Below the pieces are notes generated by a model that was given only the letters and a program-made list of their open reading frames with translations, was not told the DNA's origin and ran no database searches. The position numbers and the translations under genes were made by a program. Positions 20,713-61,512 of a DNA stretch of 64,000 bases are shown one piece after another. Positions within the stretch are counted from its first letter, which is position 1. Each line of letters starts with the position of its first letter. This DNA is from Ostrea edulis (lineage: Eukaryota): positions 59,272,001 through 59,336,000 of the forward strand of contig NC_079166.1 in the NCBI RefSeq assembly GCF_947568905.1, written 5' to 3'.

Positions 20713-23182
20713 AGCAAATAATAAAGTGTTATTTTTCTCACATTTTATCAGTTCAGTATTTTAATTCAAGAGCTTTGAGAAAATTCAAAATTATTGAAAT
20801 CCTTCTTTGAATATATGCAAAAATTAATTACACAGTATGAAGATCTCAGCATACCTGAAAATGGTTTACAATATAAGTGTAAAGTACAAAACCCAAGGTT
20901 GTCCATAAAAAAGCTATACATAATATATATCAAATTGAAATTTGAAGAAAACAATACAAACTATTTTTCTTTATCGTGTAATGTAAATCAGAAAATATAC
21001 GACATACATATGTACATCACAAGCAAAAATATGTCTTAGCAGTGTAAGACAGAAAAATCTTGTATGGCTGTCTCACATGGGTTGAGTTGGTCTCACACTA
21101 GTGATTATGTGAGAAAGATGTATATTGCCTTATACTGGCATGAGCCTCACTATTAATATATAATCAATTGAAATATAGAGTCTGTATATTGATGAAGCAA
21201 ACTAAAGGCCAATTTCATTTGTCCAAAACTGGTGTACACTGCATTGCATACGTTATAAAACTGGTGTAAAACAACGCATTGAAAAATAAAATAAACTGTC
21301 GAAAACAAAAATATGGCAGAACATGTTATTTTCATTCTTGCCACTTTTATAATATATTCAAATCATCCAAATCCTTGACATAATTCACAAAGATCCCATA
21401 AAAGCATGAACATGATACATGCATGCAAACTATATAAACGGTGAAGCTGTTATGCATGAATTCTCATATTTTCAGTTGATGTTAATTTGTTAATCACCTC
21501 ATATACCCTGACAAACTAGACAGTGATTCCTTATATTTATGTTCCCAGAACTTAGGGTATACTCTGTTCTCAATAACTATACAAGAGATCCTTTATATGC
21601 AATCTTTTTAAGATGATTGTACGTACATGTATATCATTTGGATGTGCAGAAAGATAGTATTTTAGTCTGAATGTGCATGCATTGGATTTTGGTACACTAA
21701 CTTGGGAATCAGTCTAAATTTTTTGTTGTTCTTTGAGATTGTTTAATATTCATATTGTAGGCATTTATTAATTAAGACTTGTAATTTTTAAGATTTTTAT
21801 TTTTAAGATATTTTTAAGATATTTATTAACTGATCTGCATGTTCAAAATGACCAATCTGCACATGCATGCAAAATTTCATTTTGATTGGATTTAATACTA
21901 AAATGTCTGTAACTTTCTTATGAATAAAGTGAATGAGTTGATATCACAGCATAGTAGATAGTATGTGTATCTATATAGATTGGTGTAATACAAAAATGCC
22001 AACACTCAGTATATGCATATCCTGTCTTTTGAAGATTCTATATTTTTTCTATATTTCAAGGACCATAATGTTTATATTTTTTCATTAAATTCTTCTGAAG
22101 TTGAGGATTTTAGTATGTCTTGGCACTTACAAATTGGTATGGTTAAAATTACTAGCCAGCATGTGCATGCACAATTGTGCTAAATTTTGATTAGACAATT
22201 TCAAAATCTCCACAGCTTTCTTATATATGATGCAAACATGAAATTCAAACTAATTATGCTAATCATATGTACATGATACAAATACCTGTTGGATGACATC
22301 AACAGAATTACAGATTGACATATGCACATAACGTGCATTGCTTTCTTTCATTTTTTGGTACTGAAATGACCACAACTTTCTTATTAAAGGGTAATTAAAT
22401 TAAAATGATTTTTTACTGTTGATTTACAATATGAATACCTACACATGCACACGTCAAGCATTTCATTCTGATTAGTTGCATACGTAATATTTAGATAACT
22501 GGTAAATCTCTTATGAATGAGAAAAATGGAATTATATTGACATATTCCAGGTACATACTATAAAAACTTAGAACGTAAGATTATGATTAGTTGTGCAGAA
22601 GCACAATGACATAATTTCTTAAATGGGGGGATGTTTGCTTAAACTACTCTCACACATCCTAATTGAAGAGCAACTTGAACTGACCAATGCAAGTCTGTCT
22701 TCCATTCTGAGTGATTGATGAAAAGTTCCTGTGGTTTTAAAAACGATAGAAAATGCATTGTTCCTTCAAATATATTGTTGGTGCGAACAGATATTCTAAG
22801 TATTTTTACAAACTATGGTCTTTCTCTGATCGATTGAGAGGGGTCGTAAAATCTTATGTCAGTAAAATAAAGGAGACATAATAGAAATTTGAAGGAGTGA
22901 TTATTGGGATACCAGATCCCCCCCCCCCCCCCCCCCCCATGTAAATATAGAAGAGAGAGGGTTAATTTGTGATGAGCCACTGTGATGAAATCTCCAAATG
23001 TTTTAGATATACATATACAACAATATAAGATAAACAACTTTGTATTCAATATTTGTATTCACCTGAGGATGGATGTTAAAATCCAGAAAGCACTAGCGAT
23101 TTGAATATATTTTGGAACTGCATATTTTCCTGCTTTTTTATTTAATTATTTTGACTGTGTGATATCAACTCTTTCTATTTGG

Positions 23183-32400: not shown

Positions 32401-32752
32401 GTTGATGATACAGGGGTTTCAACGCTCTCGATTGGAGTAAGCTTTTGGCTATGATCGTTATATTTAGTTCGTCAATACAACCTATCATTGGGTCAAATAC
32501 TGTCTGATGTGTTTCATACCGATTGTTAAGCCGTTCTTGGCACACTGATTTTGACTGCAGATAACTCTGTTTACCTGATCAGGATATAGGGCTCACGGCG
32601 GGTGTGACCGGTCAACAGGGGATGCTTATGCCTCCTAGGCACCTGATTTCACCTCTGGTGTGTCCAGGGGTCCGCGTTTGCCCAACTATCTATTTTGCAT
32701 TGCTTATAGGAGTTATGAGATTGATCACTGTTCTTTATCGTCATCTTTCACC
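32401..32752 (+). mobile_element. Penelope-like fragment (RT C-terminus + 3' UTR)
   Basis: Matches the reverse complement of 40829-41190. Confidence 0.9.
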
Positions 32753-40515: not shown

Positions 40516-40828
40516 AGAATTGGAAATCAATGGAATGTGAAAGATATGACTCAAAGGACATATGTCAGAATTAATATGACATACACTACTACTTAAAGTG
40601 TGGCAACAGCTGTCCAAACATATGTGTTTATGTAAACCTCTATGTAGAATTGAAACTAATGTTGGATATACATATACCTAAACAAAATGTCAACGAGGTA
40701 TGATACCCATTTTAAATTATAATGAAAATATGAATTTAAACCGGGGTGGTATTTGAAAACATTAATTTGTGTTACAAGTGTATGCAAAAACTACTACATA
40801 CAATAATACTGAAGATTAAATGAGATAT

Positions 40829-42259
40829 GCAAGATGAAGATAACGAACAGTGATCAATCTCATAACTCCTAAAAGCAATACAAAATAGATAGTAGGGCAA
40901 ACACGGACCCCTGTACACACCAGAGGTGGGATCAGGTGCCTAGGAAAAGTAAACACCCCCTGTTGACCGGTCACACCCGCTGTGTGCCCTATATCCTGAT
41001 CAGGTAAACGGAATAACCCGCAGTCAAAATCGATGTGTCAAGAACGGCGTAACAATCGGTATGAAACCCGTCAGACAGCATTTGACCCAATGCGAGGTTG
41101 TATTGACGAACTAGATCGTTATAACGACCATAGAATTTGCGAAATGCTGACTTCAATCGAGACTGTTGAAACCCCTGTACCATCAACTTGTTTGTCAGTA
41201 GCTTACCTCGATTTAAAACCTGACTATACGCAGAACAAGGTCTTGCATATCGAATCAGTTGAGATATATAAACACCGTATGCAGGTGATAATGGAATATT
41301 GCTACATAAATATGGGAAGTTGACGATGGAGAAGCTGAAATCATCCCGTTTGTCAAACAGTTGAGTTGTCAGTTTACCGTTAATGTATATTTTCAATAAA
41401 ATATCTAAGTATGAAATAGAAGTGGACGACTCTGTGGTGTCCTTTATTTCGAGCTCACAGGGATATATCAAATCAACATATGAATGAAAGCTATTATTGT
41501 TAATAGACAAAACGTCATCGATATATCGAAATGTCGAATTGAAGGCCACAGCGAAAGATTTTTTCTTCTCACGTAGAAGTTTTTGAATAAATTCTGCTTC
41601 ATATGAATATAGAAACAGGTCAGCTAACAAAGGAGCACAATTCGTACCCATGGGAATTCCAATAGACCGTTGGAAGACCTGATCACCAAAGACCACGAAG
41701 ATATTGTCAATGAGGAACTCTAGCATATTTTTTATTTCAACTTCAGAGTACTCGTGCGTGGAATCAGAGTGGTGTTTAACAAAGTAAGTTTTTGAATGAC
41801 TGATCACTAGATATGAATATTTCCGTTTTCCGTTTTCGTTGAAGAAGCAACTGTCTATGATGTCAAAAGGTCTAGTCTTTAATTTATCGTGAGGAATGGT
41901 CGTGTATAGTGTTGAAAAGTCATAGGTTTTAATGATTTGGGAAAAATTCTGCGATTTCAAGTTTATTAAAATTTCTTTAAAATTTCTTAGAATCCACATT
42001 TGATTAACGCCACTTCTTGCATATGTAGTCACAGCTGTTAATATTTTCGTGTGGAGCAAAGATAGGGGCTTGGTAGAGCACTTACTGAATCCTGCAATGT
42101 ATCTTTGTTTGTAAGAGTTTTGATGTAGTTTAGGAATCTAGTATAGGTACGGTAACTCATATGCATTCGACCCATTGACTGAAGCATGGGTTTGAAGAAT
42201 TTCATATTTTGAAAGGGCAGTTGGAGTATAAGTATGATTACCAAAAGTGGAATTAGTGC
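40829..42259 (-). mobile_element. 5'-truncated Penelope-like retroelement (probably Naiad clade) with RT domain
   Basis: LPYLY*IPKLH..RYIAG, YDFSTLYTTIPH, GIPMGTNCAPLLADLFLYSYE, FRYIDDVL, SYLD, DKRDDF..PLSPAYGVYISQLIRY. No C-terminal GIY-YIG, consistent with N-terminal-endonuclease Naiads. Empty site at ~8427 in the duplicate segment. TAG at 42138-42140. Confidence 0.9.
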
Positions 42260-43631: not shown

Positions 43632-44283
43632 CAACTGATTCGATACATGCCAGCTTCCTCTGCATATGATCAGTTTTAAATCGAAGCACGCTACCAACAA
43701 ACAAGTTGATGTTACAGGAGTTTCAACAGTCTCGTTTAAAGTCAGCATTTCGCAGAATCTATGGCCGTTTTAATGATCTAGTATGTCAATTCAACGTATC
43801 ATTCAGTCAAATACTGACTGACGTGTGTAATACCGATTGTTAGACCGTTCTTACGTCAGTGATTTTGACTACATATTAGTCCGTTTACGTGATGAATATA
43901 TACGGCTCAAGGCGCGTGTGACCGGTAAACAAGGGTTGTTTGCTCTCCCCAGGCACCTCATCCCACCTCTGGTATGTCAAAGAGTCTGCGTTAGTCCAAT
44001 TTTCTATTCCTTATATGTCATTGAGTCTTGCAATCGACCACTAATCATCATATTCACTTTTCTTAACGCATCAACGCCTACAGTAACACTGGAATTCCGT
44101 TTTTAAGGTCGTATCTGAAAAAACTCATGAATCTCACTTTTAAATGCTAGTGTTTGGCTGAACTAGTAATCACTACCTATGTTTACGTCTTAAATTTGAC
44201 GTGATCATGACACTAGCGGGGCTCAAACTCATGAACTCCCTGTTACCTAGCGAACGCTTTACCACTAGGCTACAACGACCGGT
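43370..44283 (-). mobile_element. Full tRNA-SINE (Meta/Deu-type) split by a Penelope-like insertion
   Basis: Head at 44283-44063 (A box TAGCCTAGTGG, B box GAGTTTGAGCCCC, GACCTTAAAAACGG..GTAGGCG..TAAGAA) resumes as GAACCCTCACTGCT at 43509-43370 with a (CAAA)n tail. Confidence 0.8.
43511..44062 (+). mobile_element. Older Penelope-like fragment containing an internal (TA)~34 expansion (43563-43631)
   Basis: RT codons NF(P)YLCSNI..G-V-Y-(TA)n-Q-L-I-R-Y continue across the microsatellite, followed by the 3' UTR. Confidence 0.85.
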
Positions 44284-56400: not shown

Positions 56401-57234
56401 CGCATACTCAATAACCCCTCAAGTTTTGTTTGATTATTCTGTGTTTGGTAAGCTTCTATTACTTTACTTACGGCGACTGGGATTCCATCTCACTTGCAAA
56501 CTTTATTCACGAAATTCTAATGATAGCACACGGTAATTGTAAAACTGACGTCATTGTTGTGATGTATTTTTATGCGAAATTCCCCAGCCTAACGAGTTTG
56601 CTATAAACTGCACGATACAAAAATAGTGACAAATTTTCAACAATTAAACACTTTGAGGTCAGCGACGAATACGTATGACCAGTGGCTGCACAGATATCAT
56701 ACACTGTATAGGCTTATGGTGCTTTGAACAATGAATTATGCTTATCTACAACACATTTCATTGAAATATCTACAGTGTCTGAAAATAAATTTCAATGATA
56801 TAATATTCTCTTTTTTTTTATTTCGCGCACCCGTTGGAAGGTTCGCATCTGAGATTAGGAGTTATGTCAATTTTTTGGGGAAGTTTATTTTTGATTTCGA
56901 CATCGAAGGGGAATTATGAAATTAGAAAGAAAAACGGGCGTCACAGCGCTTGTTCACAGTGCTACAGAGTTCTAAACATGACATTTTTATAATTAAATTT
57001 GACTCAAGTTTTATTTAATTATTCTTGATTTGTCTATTGGTGTCAAAACAACATACGCAACACAAATCAATCATTACGTAACAATAGATATATAATCATG
57101 TCTTCTAACAATAAAGATAAAAAGTTTATTACCAGTAATGACCTTTTACACTCGATATACGACAAAATATGATATCAAATTTGAGAGTTTAAAAGGACAT
57201 ATTAAAAGGATGTTTCATTCCTAGACGAACTTAC

Positions 57235-57331
57235 CTGTAGCAATACAAAATGTGTTGTTGGACGACGTAGATATACAAGTTGAGTAATTATTACACACTT
57301 TATCTCCACAAGTCCGGTTGTTGATGTTATT
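57235..57331 (-). CDS. Gene A exon 2: short 4-Cys module
   Basis: ttcag|AAT..ACAG|gtaagt, 97 bp; NNINNRTCGDKVCNNYSTCISTSSNNTFCIAT. Confidence 0.88.
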
Positions 57332-57939
57332 CTGAAATGAATTGATATTCTCCAAAATAACGTAGTTCTTAAACTTAAGCCCGATCGGAATTATAAAAGG
57401 AATGATCATAAAGGTAATTAGAAAACTGCATTCCCCTGAGGTAAAATACTTTACAAATCAATGAATCTATCAAGGAAGAAAAGATAGAATTACCAGCAAT
57501 GAAATGTGAAACTTGAAACTTTTTCTTTCCGTTTTTTGGCTTCGGATAATGCATGGAAGCGCTAACATATAAAACAAACAGTAAGACCCAGGTAATAAGG
57601 AACAAACAAGGAACATATGTACGGTAGAATTATCATGTTGTTAGTTGTTAGTGGAAGGAATATCATTTTTTAAATATGGACGTTACAATTTTTGGCCAAA
57701 CCAATATGAATAAATATGTCATCGCTATTAGATAAATTTGCAAACCTAATATCATTTCTACATGTAACTTTGTAAATAGTTGGTGGTAGAATAATTTTCC
57801 TCTCATTATTGGAAACTTCACAATCAAATATATAGTATGTTTCATCTACAATTTCATTTGCATTACAAAGATCACGAGACCACAATAAGATCTTGCTATG
57901 CCAAGCAATCTGCCACATTCATTTTGCATTTCCCAAATT

Positions 57940-58246
57940 ATATGGTCGTTATAACGATCTAGTTCGTCAATACAACCTTGCATTGGGTAAAATGCTGTCT
58001 GACGTGTTTCATACCGATTGTCAAGCCGTTCTTGGCACACTGATTTTGACTGTGGATGACTCTGTTTACCTGATCAGGATATAGGGCTCACGGCTGGTGT
58101 GACCGGTCGACAGGGGATGCTTACTCTCCCTAGGCACCAAACCCCACCTCTGGTGTGTCCAAAGGTCCGTGTTTGCCCAACTGTATATTTTGTATTGCTT
58201 ATAGGAATTATGGGATTGATCACTGTTCGTTATCTTCACCTTGCAT
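57940..58246 (+). mobile_element. Penelope-like fragment (RT end + 3' UTR)
   Basis: Family match. Confidence 0.9.
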
Positions 58247-58289
58247 TCATCTGGTAATTTGTGACTGACGCATTTGAAATTACTTTAAA

Positions 58290-58796
58290 AACAAAAGATC
58301 AATTTCAGAACTCCTAAAAGGAATACAAAATAGAGATTTGGGCAAATACGGATTCCAGTTGGTTAGAGATGGGATAAGGTGCCTAGGAGGAGTAAACTTC
58401 CACCGTCGACCAATCACACCTCCCGCGACAGACATCCATGTAGATGCTTTATGAGTTAATTAGTCAATACAATGATTTAAAATACAATTTTTCTAAAATA
58501 TCCTTCATGTGTAGTGAACAGTATTGGTGGAAAACATTATCTTTGTTAATATTGAAGATATCATATAACATCCGACGTATCCTTTTTTCCAGATACATAT
58601 TGCTTGCCAGAATCATATCATTCTGGCATTTATGAATACCTGTAAGGGAACTCTGCCAAATCCACAACATGAAAGGTGAATATAATGAACAGTGATCAAT
58701 CTCATAACTCTTATAAGCAATATTGGACACACCAGAGTTGGGATCGGGTGCCTAGGAGGAGTAAGCATCCCCTGTCGACCGGTCACATTCGCCGTT
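58290..58796 (-). mobile_element. Two short Penelope-like 3' fragments (58290-58430, 58668-58796)
   Basis: Family match, opposite orientation to their neighbours. Confidence 0.8.
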
Positions 58797-59149
58797 CAAT
58801 ACTATTATGAGTAGACTTTTTAACTTTGTTTCTTTACACATGTATATTGAGAGAACTCCAAATGTAATTACTCAATTACATTACTATTTGATATCTCCTT
58901 ACGTCCAAACCATAAGGCAAATTTGGAACAACCGTTGCATCATATATGTTCCATATCTTTTTTTACATTTAAAAAACAAAATAGAACATTTACGTGAGTT
59001 CTCCACAGAGGCGTCATACTATGTTTTTATTATGTAACAAATCAAAGCGAAATTTGCATTTCAAATTTTCATATTTGCAAACACAAAACCCTACCCTTTT
59101 TACCATTCCAAAACAAAAATTCACAAAATCATATATCACAATTATCATC

Positions 59150-59583
59150 TTCGATATGCAAGAGCACGTTCTGCGTATAGTCAGTTTTTGGGTCGAGATG
59201 GGCTGCTGACAGACGGGTTGATGGTACGGGGGTTTCAGCAGTCTCGATTAAAGTTGACATTTCGCAAATGCTGTGGTTCTTGTAACGATCTGGTTCGTCA
59301 GTGCGGTCTATCATTGGGTCAAGTGCTGTCTGCCGTGTTTCATGCATGTACCGATTGTTGAACCGTTCTTGACGTACTGGTTTTGACTGCGGATAAATCC
59401 GTTTATCTGATCGGGTTGTGGGGCTCACATCGGGTGTGGCCGGTCGACGGGTGATGTTTGCTCCTCCTAGGCGCCTGGTCCCGTCTCTGGTGTATCCGGG
59501 GGTCTGTGTTTGTCCGGCTATCTATTTTGTATTGCTTGTGGGAGTTATGAGATTGATCACTGTTCGTTATCTTCACCTTTCAT
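59150..59583 (+). mobile_element. Penelope-like fragment with A-to-G hypermutation
   Basis: Colinear with the sister copies but carries ~37 A>G changes. Confidence 0.9.
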
Positions 59584-60104
59584 AAATAAATTGACAGCGT
59601 GTATCACTTTTGATTGTAAAATTATGCTTTATACGATATACTTAAGCCATCCATTAAATAAAATGTTAGTGTAATGAGCTACAGTATAGATTCATAGTTT
59701 ATGTAATCATTTGTATTTTTTAACAGAATTGACAGAATAGTGTATATCAGCATATCGCTTTAAATACAACTAAATTAAAATTATCTATGCATAAAACCTG
59801 CTTTCTATCTGTTGATCTACATTTATCTATTCCTTATTATTTACAATAAACTCTCAGGTTTTCAGTCGCTAGACACCCGGATTCGTCAGTGTGCGATTGG
59901 TTTGTTTTTTTGTCAAGAACGCACTTTTTATTGTTATTCTGCTTCGTTTATCCGGGATTCCGTGGTTCGTTCCGGATTGTTTTTTGAAATTCATTTTCCC
60001 ATTTTCATTATAGCTTTCTTTTTCATCCGGAGAGTAATCTTTCAACTTTAGTAAGTTTTCTAGACCTGAATATTAATTGCTGTAAAAATATCTTTAAGTA
60101 TACA

Positions 60105-60478
60105 CTTAAGTAAGCTACTGACAAACTGTTGATGGTACAGGGGTTTCAACAGTCTCGATTGAAGTCAGCATTTCGCAAATTCTATGGTCGTTATAACGAT
60201 CTAGTTCGGCAATACAACCTATCATTGGGTCTAATGTTGTCTGATGTGTTTCATACCGATTGTTAAACGGTTCTTAACACACTGATTTTGACTGCGGATA
60301 ACCTGAACAGGATATAGGGCTCACTGCGGGTGTGATCGGTCGACAGGAGATGCTTACTCCTCCTATACACCTGATACTACCTCTGGTGTGCCCAGGAGTC
60401 CGTGTTTGCCCAATTATCTATTTTGTATTGCTTGAAGAAGTTATGCGGTTGATCACTGTTCGTTATCTTCACCTTTCA
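60105..60478 (+). mobile_element. Penelope-like fragment (RT end + 3' UTR)
   Basis: Family match. Confidence 0.9.
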
Positions 60479-61029
60479 CTAGACACTCAAGCTGTGCCCG
60501 CGGAATCGTGAAGATCGCAGATCGTGTAGGTAGGCGGTAGGAATTGATGGTCTTCAGACCTAAAAATGTTTCATCCTTCGCTACGTGAGTTCAATTCATT
60601 ACTTTGAAGCTTATATTTTTTTCCTGTTCACTACGTACAATTAGAAATAGTTGGGAAAGGGGGCAGTCACCTGATATATCCATATTTGCATTCGAAAAAA
60701 ACCCAGTTAGGATCATTGTAATAAAAAGTGGGGACAGTCGCCCCCAAACCACCCGATCATATATGCCTGTTACATACTGATGCTAACTATTTACGTATGT
60801 CGTTTTAATTATATAATTTTGTCTGATTAATTGCATTATTGTGTGTGAACGCATGCACAATCCTGTCTCATTACTTTCATTATTATGCTTGATGTAAATA
60901 ATATCTAATGACTATGTAGATAAATACAAGTACAGCCACCTGTATATGTTGACTACTTATAACATGCTATCTGACTTGTCACTACGTTTCGCTATGTGCG
61001 ACTACTTACACTGTACATATACACCGACA

Positions 61030-61512
61030 ATTCCTCACTAATGGCATCATTCTACAAGGTTAGTGACTACGGGTGATATATCTGACAAGTGACAGTGTTT
61101 ATGTTCCTGTCTGACTACTAACATGATGTCTGACTAGCCACCACTTACTTCGGACTATCTGACTATCACCATCATGCTGTCTGACTAGCCACCACTTACC
61201 TCAGGCTATCTAACTATATTTTCAGGCCATCTGACTACTTACTTCGGGCTATCTGAGTACTAACATCATGCTGTCTGACTACCCACCACTTACCTCAGGC
61301 TATCTGACACCTTATTGCAGGCTATCTGACTACTTATTTCAGGCTATCTGACTACTAACATCATGCTGTCTGAATACCCACCACTTATCTCAGGCTATCT
61401 GACTACTAACACCATGTTGTCTGACTACCAACCATTTACTTCAGGCTATCTGACTATCAACAGCATGCTGTCTGACTAATCAACACTTACTTCAGGCTGT
61501 CTGACTACTTAC
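61030..61512. repeat. Tandem repeat (~51-bp unit built from ~21-22-bp subunits) at the start of gene A intron 1
   Basis: Unit TCTGACTACTAACATCATGCTGTCTGACTAGCCACCACTTACCTCAGGCTA. Confidence 0.85.

What the first reader, a model, noticed from the sequence alone, without database searches (positions are those of the whole stretch)
59190..59541. Genomic retroelement copy fossilising ADAR-type A-to-I hyper-editing
Seen: I aligned this copy by hand to sister copies (40829-41290 reverse complement, 60105-60478, 57940-58246, 32401-32752). About 37 of 81 consensus As in this ~350-nt tract read G, e.g. TTTAAATCG>TTTGGGTCG, ACAAACAAG>ACAGACGGG, CAATACAAC>CAGTGCGGT, CCCAACT>TCCGGCT, TTATAGG>TTGTGGG. There are only ~7 G>A and ~18 other changes, and almost no T>C. 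The bias is therefore strand-specific and lies on the RT-sense (RNA) strand. Only ~3 of 16 As preceded by G are changed, versus about half of the others. Both ends of the copy (~40 nt each) are unedited, and other copies such as 43632-44062 show no such bias. Established: ADARs hyper-edit long dsRNA in clusters, disfavour a 5' G, and RT reads inosine as G. Inference: an ADAR-hyper-edited transcript of this Penelope-like element was reverse-transcribed and integrated. That would be a heritable DNA record of RNA-level anti-transposon defence and an RNA-editing-to-genome mutation route.
Basis: partly seen in the sequence, partly recalled or inferred. Interest (0 to 1): 0.88.

Follow-up and report, generated by a model that had tools for sequence, protein, structure and literature searches.

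The report
ADAR-edited retrotransposon copy fixed in oyster DNA
A dead, truncated copy of a very abundant oyster jumping gene has 47% of the A's in a 350-base stretch written as G on one strand only, and at least 60 other copies in the genome carry their own such patches; the best explanation is that the element's RNA was edited by an ADAR enzyme before being copied back into germline DNA, a route already described in mammals and retroviruses.

Summary
I compared window 59190-59540 with the majority state of 58 genomic sister copies. It has 37 of 79 A>G, 0 of 104 T>C, 7 G>A, 9 C>T and 9 transversions (Fisher p = 6e-17). Both ends of the copy are unedited (0 of 8 and 0 of 9 A's).

It is not a subfamily: no other genomic copy is more than 84% identical. 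It is not an assembly error: contigs from four independent studies reproduce the G alleles.

The copy (59150-59585, + strand) is the 5'-truncated 3' end of a Naiad-type Penelope-like element with about 21,000 copies. The changes lie on the reverse-transcriptase-sense strand.

The pattern recurs. Two 24-mers with every A written as G find 32 and 46 genomic places. The same 24-mers with every T written as C find none.

Twenty-eight analysed copies have their own delimited tracts. Pooled, the 5' neighbour preference is T > A > C > G, as published for oyster ADAR1. Family fragments directly next to edited copies are unbiased, which argues against an in-place DNA process. ADAR-type genes are present.

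The kind is known from mammals and retroviral proviruses. I found no published account for molluscs or Penelope-like elements.

This scan has already reported the same signature several times elsewhere in this genome (s1-301738, s1-306938, s1-271408, s1-274681). A defence role is not shown.

The parts
59150..59585 (+). Focal insertion: the 5'-truncated 3' end of a Naiad-type Penelope-like retroelement. It matches positions 987-1414 of the 1414-nt family reference used here.
   Evidence: BLAST and MAFFT against window and genomic copies. The family has a sharp common 3' end and ragged 5' ends.
59190..59540 (+). Hyper-edited tract: 37 of 79 ancestral A's read G and 0 of 104 T's read C.
   Evidence: The G alleles from 59190 to 59412 are reproduced without any difference in contigs of four runs from four studies. 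One run covers 59383-59543 with two differences.
59150..59189 (+). Unedited 5' end of the copy (0 of 8 A's changed).
59541..59585 (+). Unedited 3' end (0 of 9 A's changed). Positions 59541-59580 are a 40-nt 'tail' unit that occurs as tandem repeats and at very high copy number elsewhere in the genome.
   Evidence: One search shows 'goes back 40' joints from 59580 to 59541 in all four runs, with depth 1e6-1e7. PMC8557442 describes a 30-40 bp tail.
59150..59421 (+). Remnant of the C-terminal RT coding region. The rest of the copy, 59422-59583, corresponds to the 3' UTR.
   Evidence: Mapped by alignment to the window copy whose ORF ends at 40989. The boundary is approximate.
40827..42181 (-). Unedited sister copy that carries the RT open reading frame (40989-42059). 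It was used to fix the sense strand and to classify the family.
   Evidence: The ORF is 60% identical to residues 656-996 of a 1004-aa GIY-YIG + RT protein.
57926..58246 (+). Unedited neighbouring family fragment, a local control (4/64 A>G, 3/105 T>C).
58297..58428 (-). Unedited inverted family fragment upstream of the focal copy (3/23 A>G, 0/38 T>C).
58669..58795 (-). Unedited inverted family fragment upstream of the focal copy (1/23 A>G, 1/39 T>C).
60110..60478 (+). Unedited neighbouring family fragment, a local control (3/82 A>G, 1/115 T>C).

Best explanation
A sense-strand transcript of a Naiad-type Penelope-like retroelement was paired over about 350 nt with antisense sequence of the same family. 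The most likely partner is an adjacent inverted 5'-truncated copy, an arrangement typical of these elements. An ADAR enzyme deaminated about half of the adenosines in that duplex to inosine. The element's reverse transcriptase read inosine as G, and the 5'-truncated cDNA was integrated in the germline at window 59150-59585. It is now carried by oysters sampled in several studies.

Shown: the one-strand A>G tract and its limits; its reality in independent DNA data; its uniqueness to this copy; its recurrence in at least 60 other copies with no T>C counterpart; the ADAR-like neighbour preference; confinement to single insertion units; and the presence of ADAR-type genes.

Inferred: the dsRNA partner, the identity of the enzyme, editing before reverse transcription, and germline timing.
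For: **Focal tract.** 37/79 A>G against 0/104 T>C, p = 6e-17, with unedited ends.

**Sense strand.** The A>G strand is the RT ORF strand.

**Not a subfamily.** The best other genomic match to the focal copy is 84% identical.

**Not an artefact.** Contigs of runs X1, X2, X5 and X10, from four studies, span 58850-59412 at single-copy depth with no differences.

**Genome-wide asymmetry.**
- First 24-mer with all A written as G, up to 3 mismatches: 32 places; reversed control 0. The all-T-to-C version: 0.
- Second 24-mer: 46 places against 0.
- Denominator: 20,954 unedited places.

**Per-copy spectra.** L088 116/159 A>G with 0/202 T>C; L070 96/177 with 0/236; L061 68/124 with 0/172. Other changes in these copies are only 1-2%.

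**Block structure.** Tracts are delimited. In L063, for example, edits fall only between reference positions 786 and 1192, with 89 and 39 unedited A's outside.

**Independent insertions.** 5' truncation points differ, and sharing of edited sites is close to the expectation for independent events.

**Neighbour preference.** Pooled 5' neighbour T 0.53 > A 0.48 > C 0.39 > G 0.28 (chi-square p = 5e-22; per-site test p = 7e-6). The 3' effect is weak. This matches oyster ADAR1 on viral RNA: TA, AA and CA strong, GA weak, no strong downstream preference (PMC6651903).

**Confinement.** Family fragments within 5-200 nt of edited copies are unbiased, as in L080, L073 and L069.

**dsRNA source.** Inverted neighbouring copies are common and are a described Naiad feature (PMC8557442).

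**Enzyme.** A_deamin domains occur at five or more loci. Three of these have dsRBD hits just upstream.
Against: - No RNA data were laid, so present-day hyper-editing of this family's transcripts is not shown.
- In the focal copy alone, the depletion after a 5' G is not significant (p = 0.09).
- The element RNA does not fold unusually well on its own (z = -0.81). A partner strand is therefore needed and has not been identified.
- Some copies have about 75% of the A's in a tract changed. From my own knowledge, this exceeds the roughly 50-60% plateau seen on perfect duplexes in vitro, so repeated rounds or very heavy editing must be assumed.
- The source locus is unknown.
- The focal copy carries about 7% of other changes, so part of its history after insertion is ordinary decay.
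Confidence: 0.85

Rival explanations
1. In-place DNA mutation after insertion: a strand-biased process acting on the integrated copy. Candidates are transcription- or R-loop-associated adenine deamination on the displaced sense strand, or an unknown single-stranded-DNA adenine deaminase.
For: It would also give A>G on one strand. The ends of the copy are unedited, as a limited exposure tract might leave them. Ancestral states of the flanking DNA cannot be polarised.
Against: Family fragments lying 5-200 nt from hyper-edited copies are unbiased, so the process stops at insertion boundaries. The same holds in the window. In 13 of 28 copies the tract runs up to the 5' truncation point. C>T, chemically the easier deamination on single-stranded DNA, is not raised: 1-3 per copy in the young edited copies. 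The neighbour preference is that of ADAR. The bias follows element orientation on both genome strands.
Confidence: 0.05
2. Error-prone or adenine-mutagenic reverse transcription. This would resemble diversity-generating retroelements, or biased dNTP pools during cDNA or second-strand synthesis, without any RNA editing.
For: It would be strand-specific and tied to retrotransposition. The element encodes its own RT.
Against: The changes are almost only A>G, with very few A>C or A>T. From my own knowledge, diversity-generating retroelements replace A with any base. Only about 0.15-0.3% of copies are affected. Within a copy the changes sit in delimited blocks flanked by dozens of untouched A's. 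The 5' neighbour order T > A > C > G matches ADAR.
Confidence: 0.04
3. A distinct subfamily, or a lineage descended from a single edited master, in which the G's are inherited diagnostic sites.
For: Lightly edited copies have most of their G's at sites also edited in heavy copies. A few pairs share more sites than expected, z > 3, mostly involving the old copy L079.
Against: No genomic copy is more than 84% identical to the focal copy. Across 372 pairs, sharing is at the null once site hotness is modelled (mean z = -0.08). Tract positions and 5' truncation points differ.
Confidence: 0.02
4. An assembly or base-calling artefact, or GC-biased gene conversion.
For: None found.
Against: Contigs from four studies reproduce 58850-59412 with no differences at single-copy depth. 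Gene conversion would raise T>C as well, yet T>C is 0/104 locally and 0 hits genome-wide.
Confidence: 0.01

Closest known systems
ADAR-edited retrotransposons fixed in mammalian genomes (Knisbacher and Levanon 2015, Ann N Y Acad Sci 1341:115, PMID 25722083). Only the title was seen here, through reference lists. The content is recalled from memory.
   Same: Clusters of A>G on the sense strand of retroelement copies, read as RNA editing followed by reverse transcription and germline integration.
   Different: The host is a bivalve mollusc and the element is a Naiad-type Penelope-like element, not a LINE, SINE or LTR element. I found no report for molluscs or Penelope-like elements in the held library.
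ADAR1-type A-to-G hypermutation in retroviral proviruses: BLV, HTLV-2 and STLV-3 (PMC8025556; Ko et al. 2012 as cited there).
   Same: A-to-G clusters in integrated DNA, attributed to ADAR acting on the RNA template before reverse transcription.
   Different: Those are somatic proviruses with about 7 or more changes in about 70 bp. Here the insertions are in the germline, the tracts run 350-800 nt, and 40-75% of A's are changed.
RNA-level hyper-editing of 5'-truncated LINE and Penelope copies (Porath et al. 2017, PMC5625713).
   Same: Truncated 3'-end copies in opposite orientation form dsRNA and are massively edited. Penelope in lizard is named as a heavily edited element.
   Different: That work shows editing in RNA only. 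Here the edits are written into genomic DNA.
Oyster ADAR1 hyper-editing of herpesvirus RNA (Rosani et al. 2019, PMC6651903).
   Same: The same host group and the same upstream preference: TA, AA and CA strong, GA weak, with little downstream preference.
   Different: The substrate there is viral RNA, and no DNA record results.
APOBEC-type G>A editing of retroelement cDNA.
   Same: A host deaminase leaves a one-strand hypermutation scar in integrated retroelement copies.
   Different: It involves a different base (C on minus-strand DNA, seen as G>A on the sense strand), a different enzyme family and a different substrate. G>A is not raised here.

Membership tests
ADAR hyper-editing footprint | A>G on one strand only, with no matching T>C | tested here: met
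   37/79 against 0/104 in the focal tract. Genome-wide, 32 and 46 places for the A-to-G patterns against 0 and 0 for the T-to-C patterns.
ADAR hyper-editing footprint | Dense clustering in delimited tracts of hundreds of nucleotides | tested here: met
   The focal tract is 351 nt with unedited ends. The other copies also have blocks flanked by many unedited A's.
ADAR hyper-editing footprint | 5' neighbour preference U ~ A > C > G | tested here: met
   Pooled over 28 copies: T 0.53, A 0.48, C 0.39, G 0.28, with p = 5e-22 pooled and 7e-6 per site. In the focal copy alone it is inconclusive: 4/15 against 33/62, p = 0.09.
ADAR hyper-editing footprint | A long double-stranded RNA substrate | tested here: inconclusive
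   The element RNA alone is not unusually structured (z = -0.81). Inverted neighbouring copies are frequent and are described for Naiads. The partner of this particular template is unknown.
ADAR hyper-editing footprint | The host encodes ADAR (dsRBD plus adenosine deaminase domain) | tested here: met
   PF02137 hits at five or more loci. PF00035 hits lie 2-3 kb upstream at C6:54.93 Mb (two dsRBDs), and upstream at C1:63.15 Mb and C5:4.315 Mb. Gene models were not built.
ADAR hyper-editing footprint | The same sites are seen edited in RNA but not in the source DNA | not tested
No holder of the locus is recorded as RNA.
Penelope-like element, Naiad clade | RT joined to a GIY-YIG endonuclease, with the endonuclease N-terminal | tested here: met
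   The window ORF is 60% identical to residues 656-996 of P0124. P0124, P0150 and P0171 (999-1006 aa) have GIY-YIG at about 130-224 and RT at about 640-857. The N-terminal part was not recovered from this genome itself.
Penelope-like element, Naiad clade | A CxC motif between EN and RT, and DKA in place of DKG | tested here: met
   Each of four full-length relatives has one CxC (about residue 426-435) and one DKA (about 553-562). These diagnostic motifs are taken from PMC8557442.
Penelope-like element, Naiad clade | No canonical hammerhead ribozyme | tested here: met
   No Rfam family reaches threshold anywhere in the window.
Penelope-like element, Naiad clade | Heavy 5' truncation, adjacent tandem or inverted copies, a 30-40 bp tail, very high copy number in bivalves | tested here: met
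   Ragged 5' ends with a common 3' end. Tandem and inverted neighbours. A 40-nt tail unit with TA-rich linkers. About 21,000 places.

The most novel reading that the evidence does not exclude
Hyper-editing followed by retrotransposition is a regular, measurable germline process in bivalves. It is driven by the inverted-repeat architecture that Penelope-like insertions build for themselves. The fall-off of editing towards the 3' UTR and tail (pooled 0.33, 0.25, 0.19, 0.08 over the last 200 nt) would then reflect a filter: only RNAs whose 3' recognition element escaped editing can still be reverse-transcribed. If so, the fossil edits map the cis-element that the element's RT needs.
Probability: 0.3. 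Interest if true: 0.65.

Novelty: new member of a known kind. Interest (0 to 1): 0.5.

Why it matters
It shows cleanly, and with numbers, that RNA editing can be written back into heritable DNA in an invertebrate, through a retroelement class (Penelope-like, Naiad) whose replication is poorly understood.

The fossil copies give three things without any experiment:
- a site-by-site record of what oyster ADAR does to long dsRNA in the cells where retrotransposition becomes heritable;
- a lower bound on how often edited templates still integrate, about 0.15-0.3% of copies at the stringent cut-off used here;
- hints about which part of the element RNA must stay intact.

The effect on the genome as a whole is small: tens of copies with some thousands of substitutions. 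The principle is already established in mammals and retroviruses.

Tried and rejected
- **Rfam scans.** A scan of 57000-61500 at E <= 1 and of the whole window at gathering threshold gave no hits. There is no hammerhead or other known RNA family.
- **Folding.** The unedited 429-nt RNA folds no better than shuffles (z = -0.81). An intramolecular hairpin is rejected as the dsRNA source.
- **Edited lineages.** I looked for shared edits at different loci, which would prove that edits travelled through retrotransposition. With site hotness modelled, sharing is at the null, so this test gave no support either way.
- **Target-site duplication.** I looked for one around 59150 and 59585 by eye and saw none convincing. 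No claim is made.
- **Pfam on the RT fragment.** It gave only a sub-threshold RVT_1 hit. Classification needed the longer relatives.
- **Knisbacher and Levanon 2015.** The paper is not held, so only its title is cited.
- **Further loci.** The second-pattern hits were therefore counted but not analysed copy by copy.
- **Method note.** A majority-rule reference of the 3' 1.4 kb of this non-viral retrotransposon was used only inside scripts, to polarise substitutions. It was not printed or exported.
- **N's.** The 156 N's in the window were left untouched.

Full report
**What the window is.** The window is G000:C3:59272001-59336000 of an 895-Mb animal genome in 52 contigs. DNA runs labelled 'oyster metagenome' and one coded organism hold the locus. 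A close protein relative is named from Ostrea edulis. The host is therefore an oyster, probably O. edulis; that species call is an inference.

**The observation.**
- BLAST of 59101-59650 against the window finds about 16 related fragments. A nine-sequence alignment already shows G in the focal copy where all the others have A.
- I fetched 58 genomic copies, aligned them, and polarised each column by the majority of the other copies.
- Core, 59190-59540: 37/79 A>G, 0/104 T>C, 7/83 G>A, 9/79 C>T, 9 transversions, plus one 6-nt insertion. Fisher test of A>G against T>C gives p = 6e-17.
- The first 40 nt (59150-59189) and the last 45 nt (59541-59585) have 0/8 and 0/9 A>G. At 47% editing these runs have chance probabilities of about 0.006 and 0.003.
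- As after a 5' G are edited 4/15, against 33/62 for the others (p = 0.09). As before a 3' G are edited 9/14.
- All 18 other family fragments in the window are unbiased.

**Is it real DNA?** Twenty runs from eight studies hold the locus. Contigs of four runs from four studies span the unique 5' flank and the tract, 58850-59412, with no differences at single-copy depth. One run also covers 59383-59543 with two differences. These are Logan contigs, not raw reads. Even so, they are independent short-read assemblies from several samples, so an assembly or base-calling artefact is excluded and the allele is widespread.

**What the element is.**
- Copies share a sharp 3' end and have ragged 5' ends.
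- The sister copy at 40827-42181 (- strand) carries a 356-aa open frame with a weak RVT_1 match. That frame ends inside the 430-nt unit, which fixes the sense strand. In the focal copy the sense strand is the + strand, the strand that shows A>G.
- The ORF is 60% identical to residues 656-996 of a 1004-aa protein.
- Full-length relatives of 999-1006 aa have GIY-YIG at about 130-224 and RT at about 640-857. Each has one CxC motif and one DKA motif.
- These are the diagnostic features of the Naiad clade of Penelope-like elements (Craig et al. 2021, PMC8557442). That paper also describes about 1000-aa ORFs in oysters, tens of thousands of copies in bivalves, heavy 5' truncation, adjacent inverted truncated copies, a 30-40 bp tail, no hammerhead ribozyme and (TA)n targets.
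- All of these fit here: about 21,000 places, no Rfam hit, inverted and tandem neighbours, and a 40-nt tail unit with ATA/TATA linkers.

**Not a subfamily.** A genome search with the focal copy returns itself and then ordinary copies at 83-84% identity.

**It recurs.**
- Because the query was G-rich, the same search enriched for other hypermutated copies: L047 39 A>G / 1 T>C, L032 35/0, L054 20/2, L034 18/0. Their site sets overlap only partly.
- As an unbiased test I took a conserved 24-mer with seven A's and seven T's. Writing every A as G and allowing 3 mismatches gives 32 genomic places, including the focal copy; the reversed control gives 0. Writing every T as C gives 0 places.
- A second 24-mer gives 46 against 0.
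- Thirteen copies are hit by both patterns and four hits are one segmental duplication, so about 60 distinct copies are involved.
- The unedited first 24-mer occurs at 20,954 places. The stringent cut-off of at least 4 of 7 A's therefore catches about 0.15-0.2% of copies per segment.
- Hits lie on both genome strands, so the bias follows the element, not the chromosome.

**Anatomy of the edited copies.**
- I scored each copy against a 1414-nt majority reference built inside scripts from 23 unedited copies.
- The copies show, for example, 116/159 A>G with 0/202 T>C (L088), 96/177 with 0/236 (L070), 68/124 with 0/172 (L061) and 113/221 with 2/291 (L086). Other changes are often only 1-2%.
- 5' truncation points differ, so these are separate insertions.
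- Edits form delimited blocks. L063 covers reference 468-1414 but is edited only between 786 and 1192 (64/121), with 89 and 39 untouched A's outside.
- In 13 of 28 copies the block runs up to the truncated 5' end.
- With site hotness modelled, sharing of edited sites between copies is at the null: mean z = -0.08 over 372 pairs. Raw observed/expected has a median of 1.12. The events are mostly independent, with common hot and cold sites.

**Enzyme signature.**
- I pooled 28 copies, counted tracts only and excluded the region used to ascertain them. Editing by 5' neighbour is T 0.53, A 0.48, C 0.39, G 0.28 (chi-square p = 5e-22; per-site Mann-Whitney, 5' G against the rest, p = 7e-6).
- The 3' effect is small, with T lowest.
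- Rosani et al. 2019 report the same for oyster ADAR1 on herpesvirus RNA: T, A or C upstream favoured, GA weak, no strong downstream preference (PMC6651903).
- The genome has adenosine-deaminase (A_deamin) domains at five or more loci. dsRBD hits lie just upstream of three of them, including two dsRBDs at C6:54.93 Mb.

**Before or after integration?**
- Family fragments lying 5-200 nt from edited copies are unbiased. In L080 the flanking fragments show 5/72 and 2/39 A>G next to a copy with 28/71. L073 and L069 behave alike. The window neighbours of the focal copy are also unbiased.
- Among 72 unselected secondary copies, A>G is 6.0% and T>C is 4.0%. The only outlier is a piece of an already-known edited copy.
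- A regional DNA process is therefore unlikely. The scar belongs to one insertion unit, as expected if the template RNA carried it.

**Where the dsRNA came from.**
- The RNA alone folds no better than shuffles (z = -0.81).
- Inverted copies within 1-2 kb are common and are a built-in feature of Naiad insertions.
- Porath et al. 2017 show that truncated 3'-end LINE copies, and Penelope in lizard, are massively hyper-edited in RNA for this reason (PMC5625713).
- No T>C-hypermutated copies exist. Only the sense-oriented arm is reverse-transcribed, which fits an RT that recognises the element's own 3' end.
- In the focal copy the last edit (59540) lies one base before the 40-nt tail unit (59541-59580), and the first unedited A is at 59543. 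This fits pairing with a partner that lacks the tail. Other copies do have a few edits inside the tail, so the point is only suggestive.

**Rivals.** The rivals considered were subfamily, artefact, gene conversion, in-place DNA deamination and mutagenic reverse transcription. Each is weighed in its own section of this report. Together I give them about 0.12.

**Caveats.**
- No RNA was examined.
- Some copies have about 75% of tract A's changed, more than the in-vitro plateau I recall for ADAR.
- The partner strand and the source locus are unknown.
- A 'defence' role is not shown.

**Novelty.**
- The route from editing to reverse transcription to integration is known from mammalian retrotransposons (Knisbacher and Levanon 2015, title seen; content recalled) and from proviruses of BLV, HTLV-2 and STLV-3 (PMC8025556).
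- Searches of the held library found nothing for molluscs or Penelope-like elements.
- This scan has already reported the same signature elsewhere in this genome, with follow-ups reaching the same reading (s1-301738, s1-306938, s1-271408, and s1-274681 for a LINE). Those notes are not independent evidence.
- I rate this a new member of a known kind, with moderate interest.

Noticed in passing
window 59541-59580 (and the 3' end of every family copy): The 40-nt terminal unit has contig depth of 1e6-1e7 against single-copy depth of 6-50. It also shows 'goes back 40' joints with ATA, TATA or ATATA linkers in all four runs. It therefore exists elsewhere as tandem arrays or as an extremely abundant module, probably the Naiad 'tail' next to (TA)n targets.
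   Followed up: partly
window 57926-60478: Five fragments of the same family lie within 2.5 kb, in the orientation order +, -, -, + (the focal copy), +. Only the focal one is hypermutated. The family tends to insert near or into itself.
   Followed up: partly
L002-L090, family reference position 1: At least 11 copies start at exactly the same position, about 1.4 kb from the 3' end, inside the RT coding region. This could be a preferred truncation point or a transcribed truncated master, in effect a non-autonomous subfamily.
   Followed up: no
G000:C1:5.03-5.67 Mb: One hyper-edited copy appears four times with identical sequence at about 100-130 kb spacing. Unedited copies recur there at regular spacing of about 27-55 kb. 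This looks like a large tandem segmental duplication.
   Followed up: no
L080:2491-2747: A 36-nt internal piece of the element (reference 711-750) is repeated about five times head to tail, forming a minisatellite derived from the element body.
   Followed up: no
L044, L045, L049: Young copies carry 6-7 A>G with no T>C and almost no other change. This suggests lighter editing below the stringent cut-off, so the true share of edited insertions is higher than 0.3%. These loci were enriched by a G-rich query, so no rate can be given.
   Followed up: no
window 59336-59341: The focal copy has a private 6-nt insertion (GCATGT) in the former coding region.
   Followed up: no
window, 156 N's: The window contains 156 N's.
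   Followed up: no
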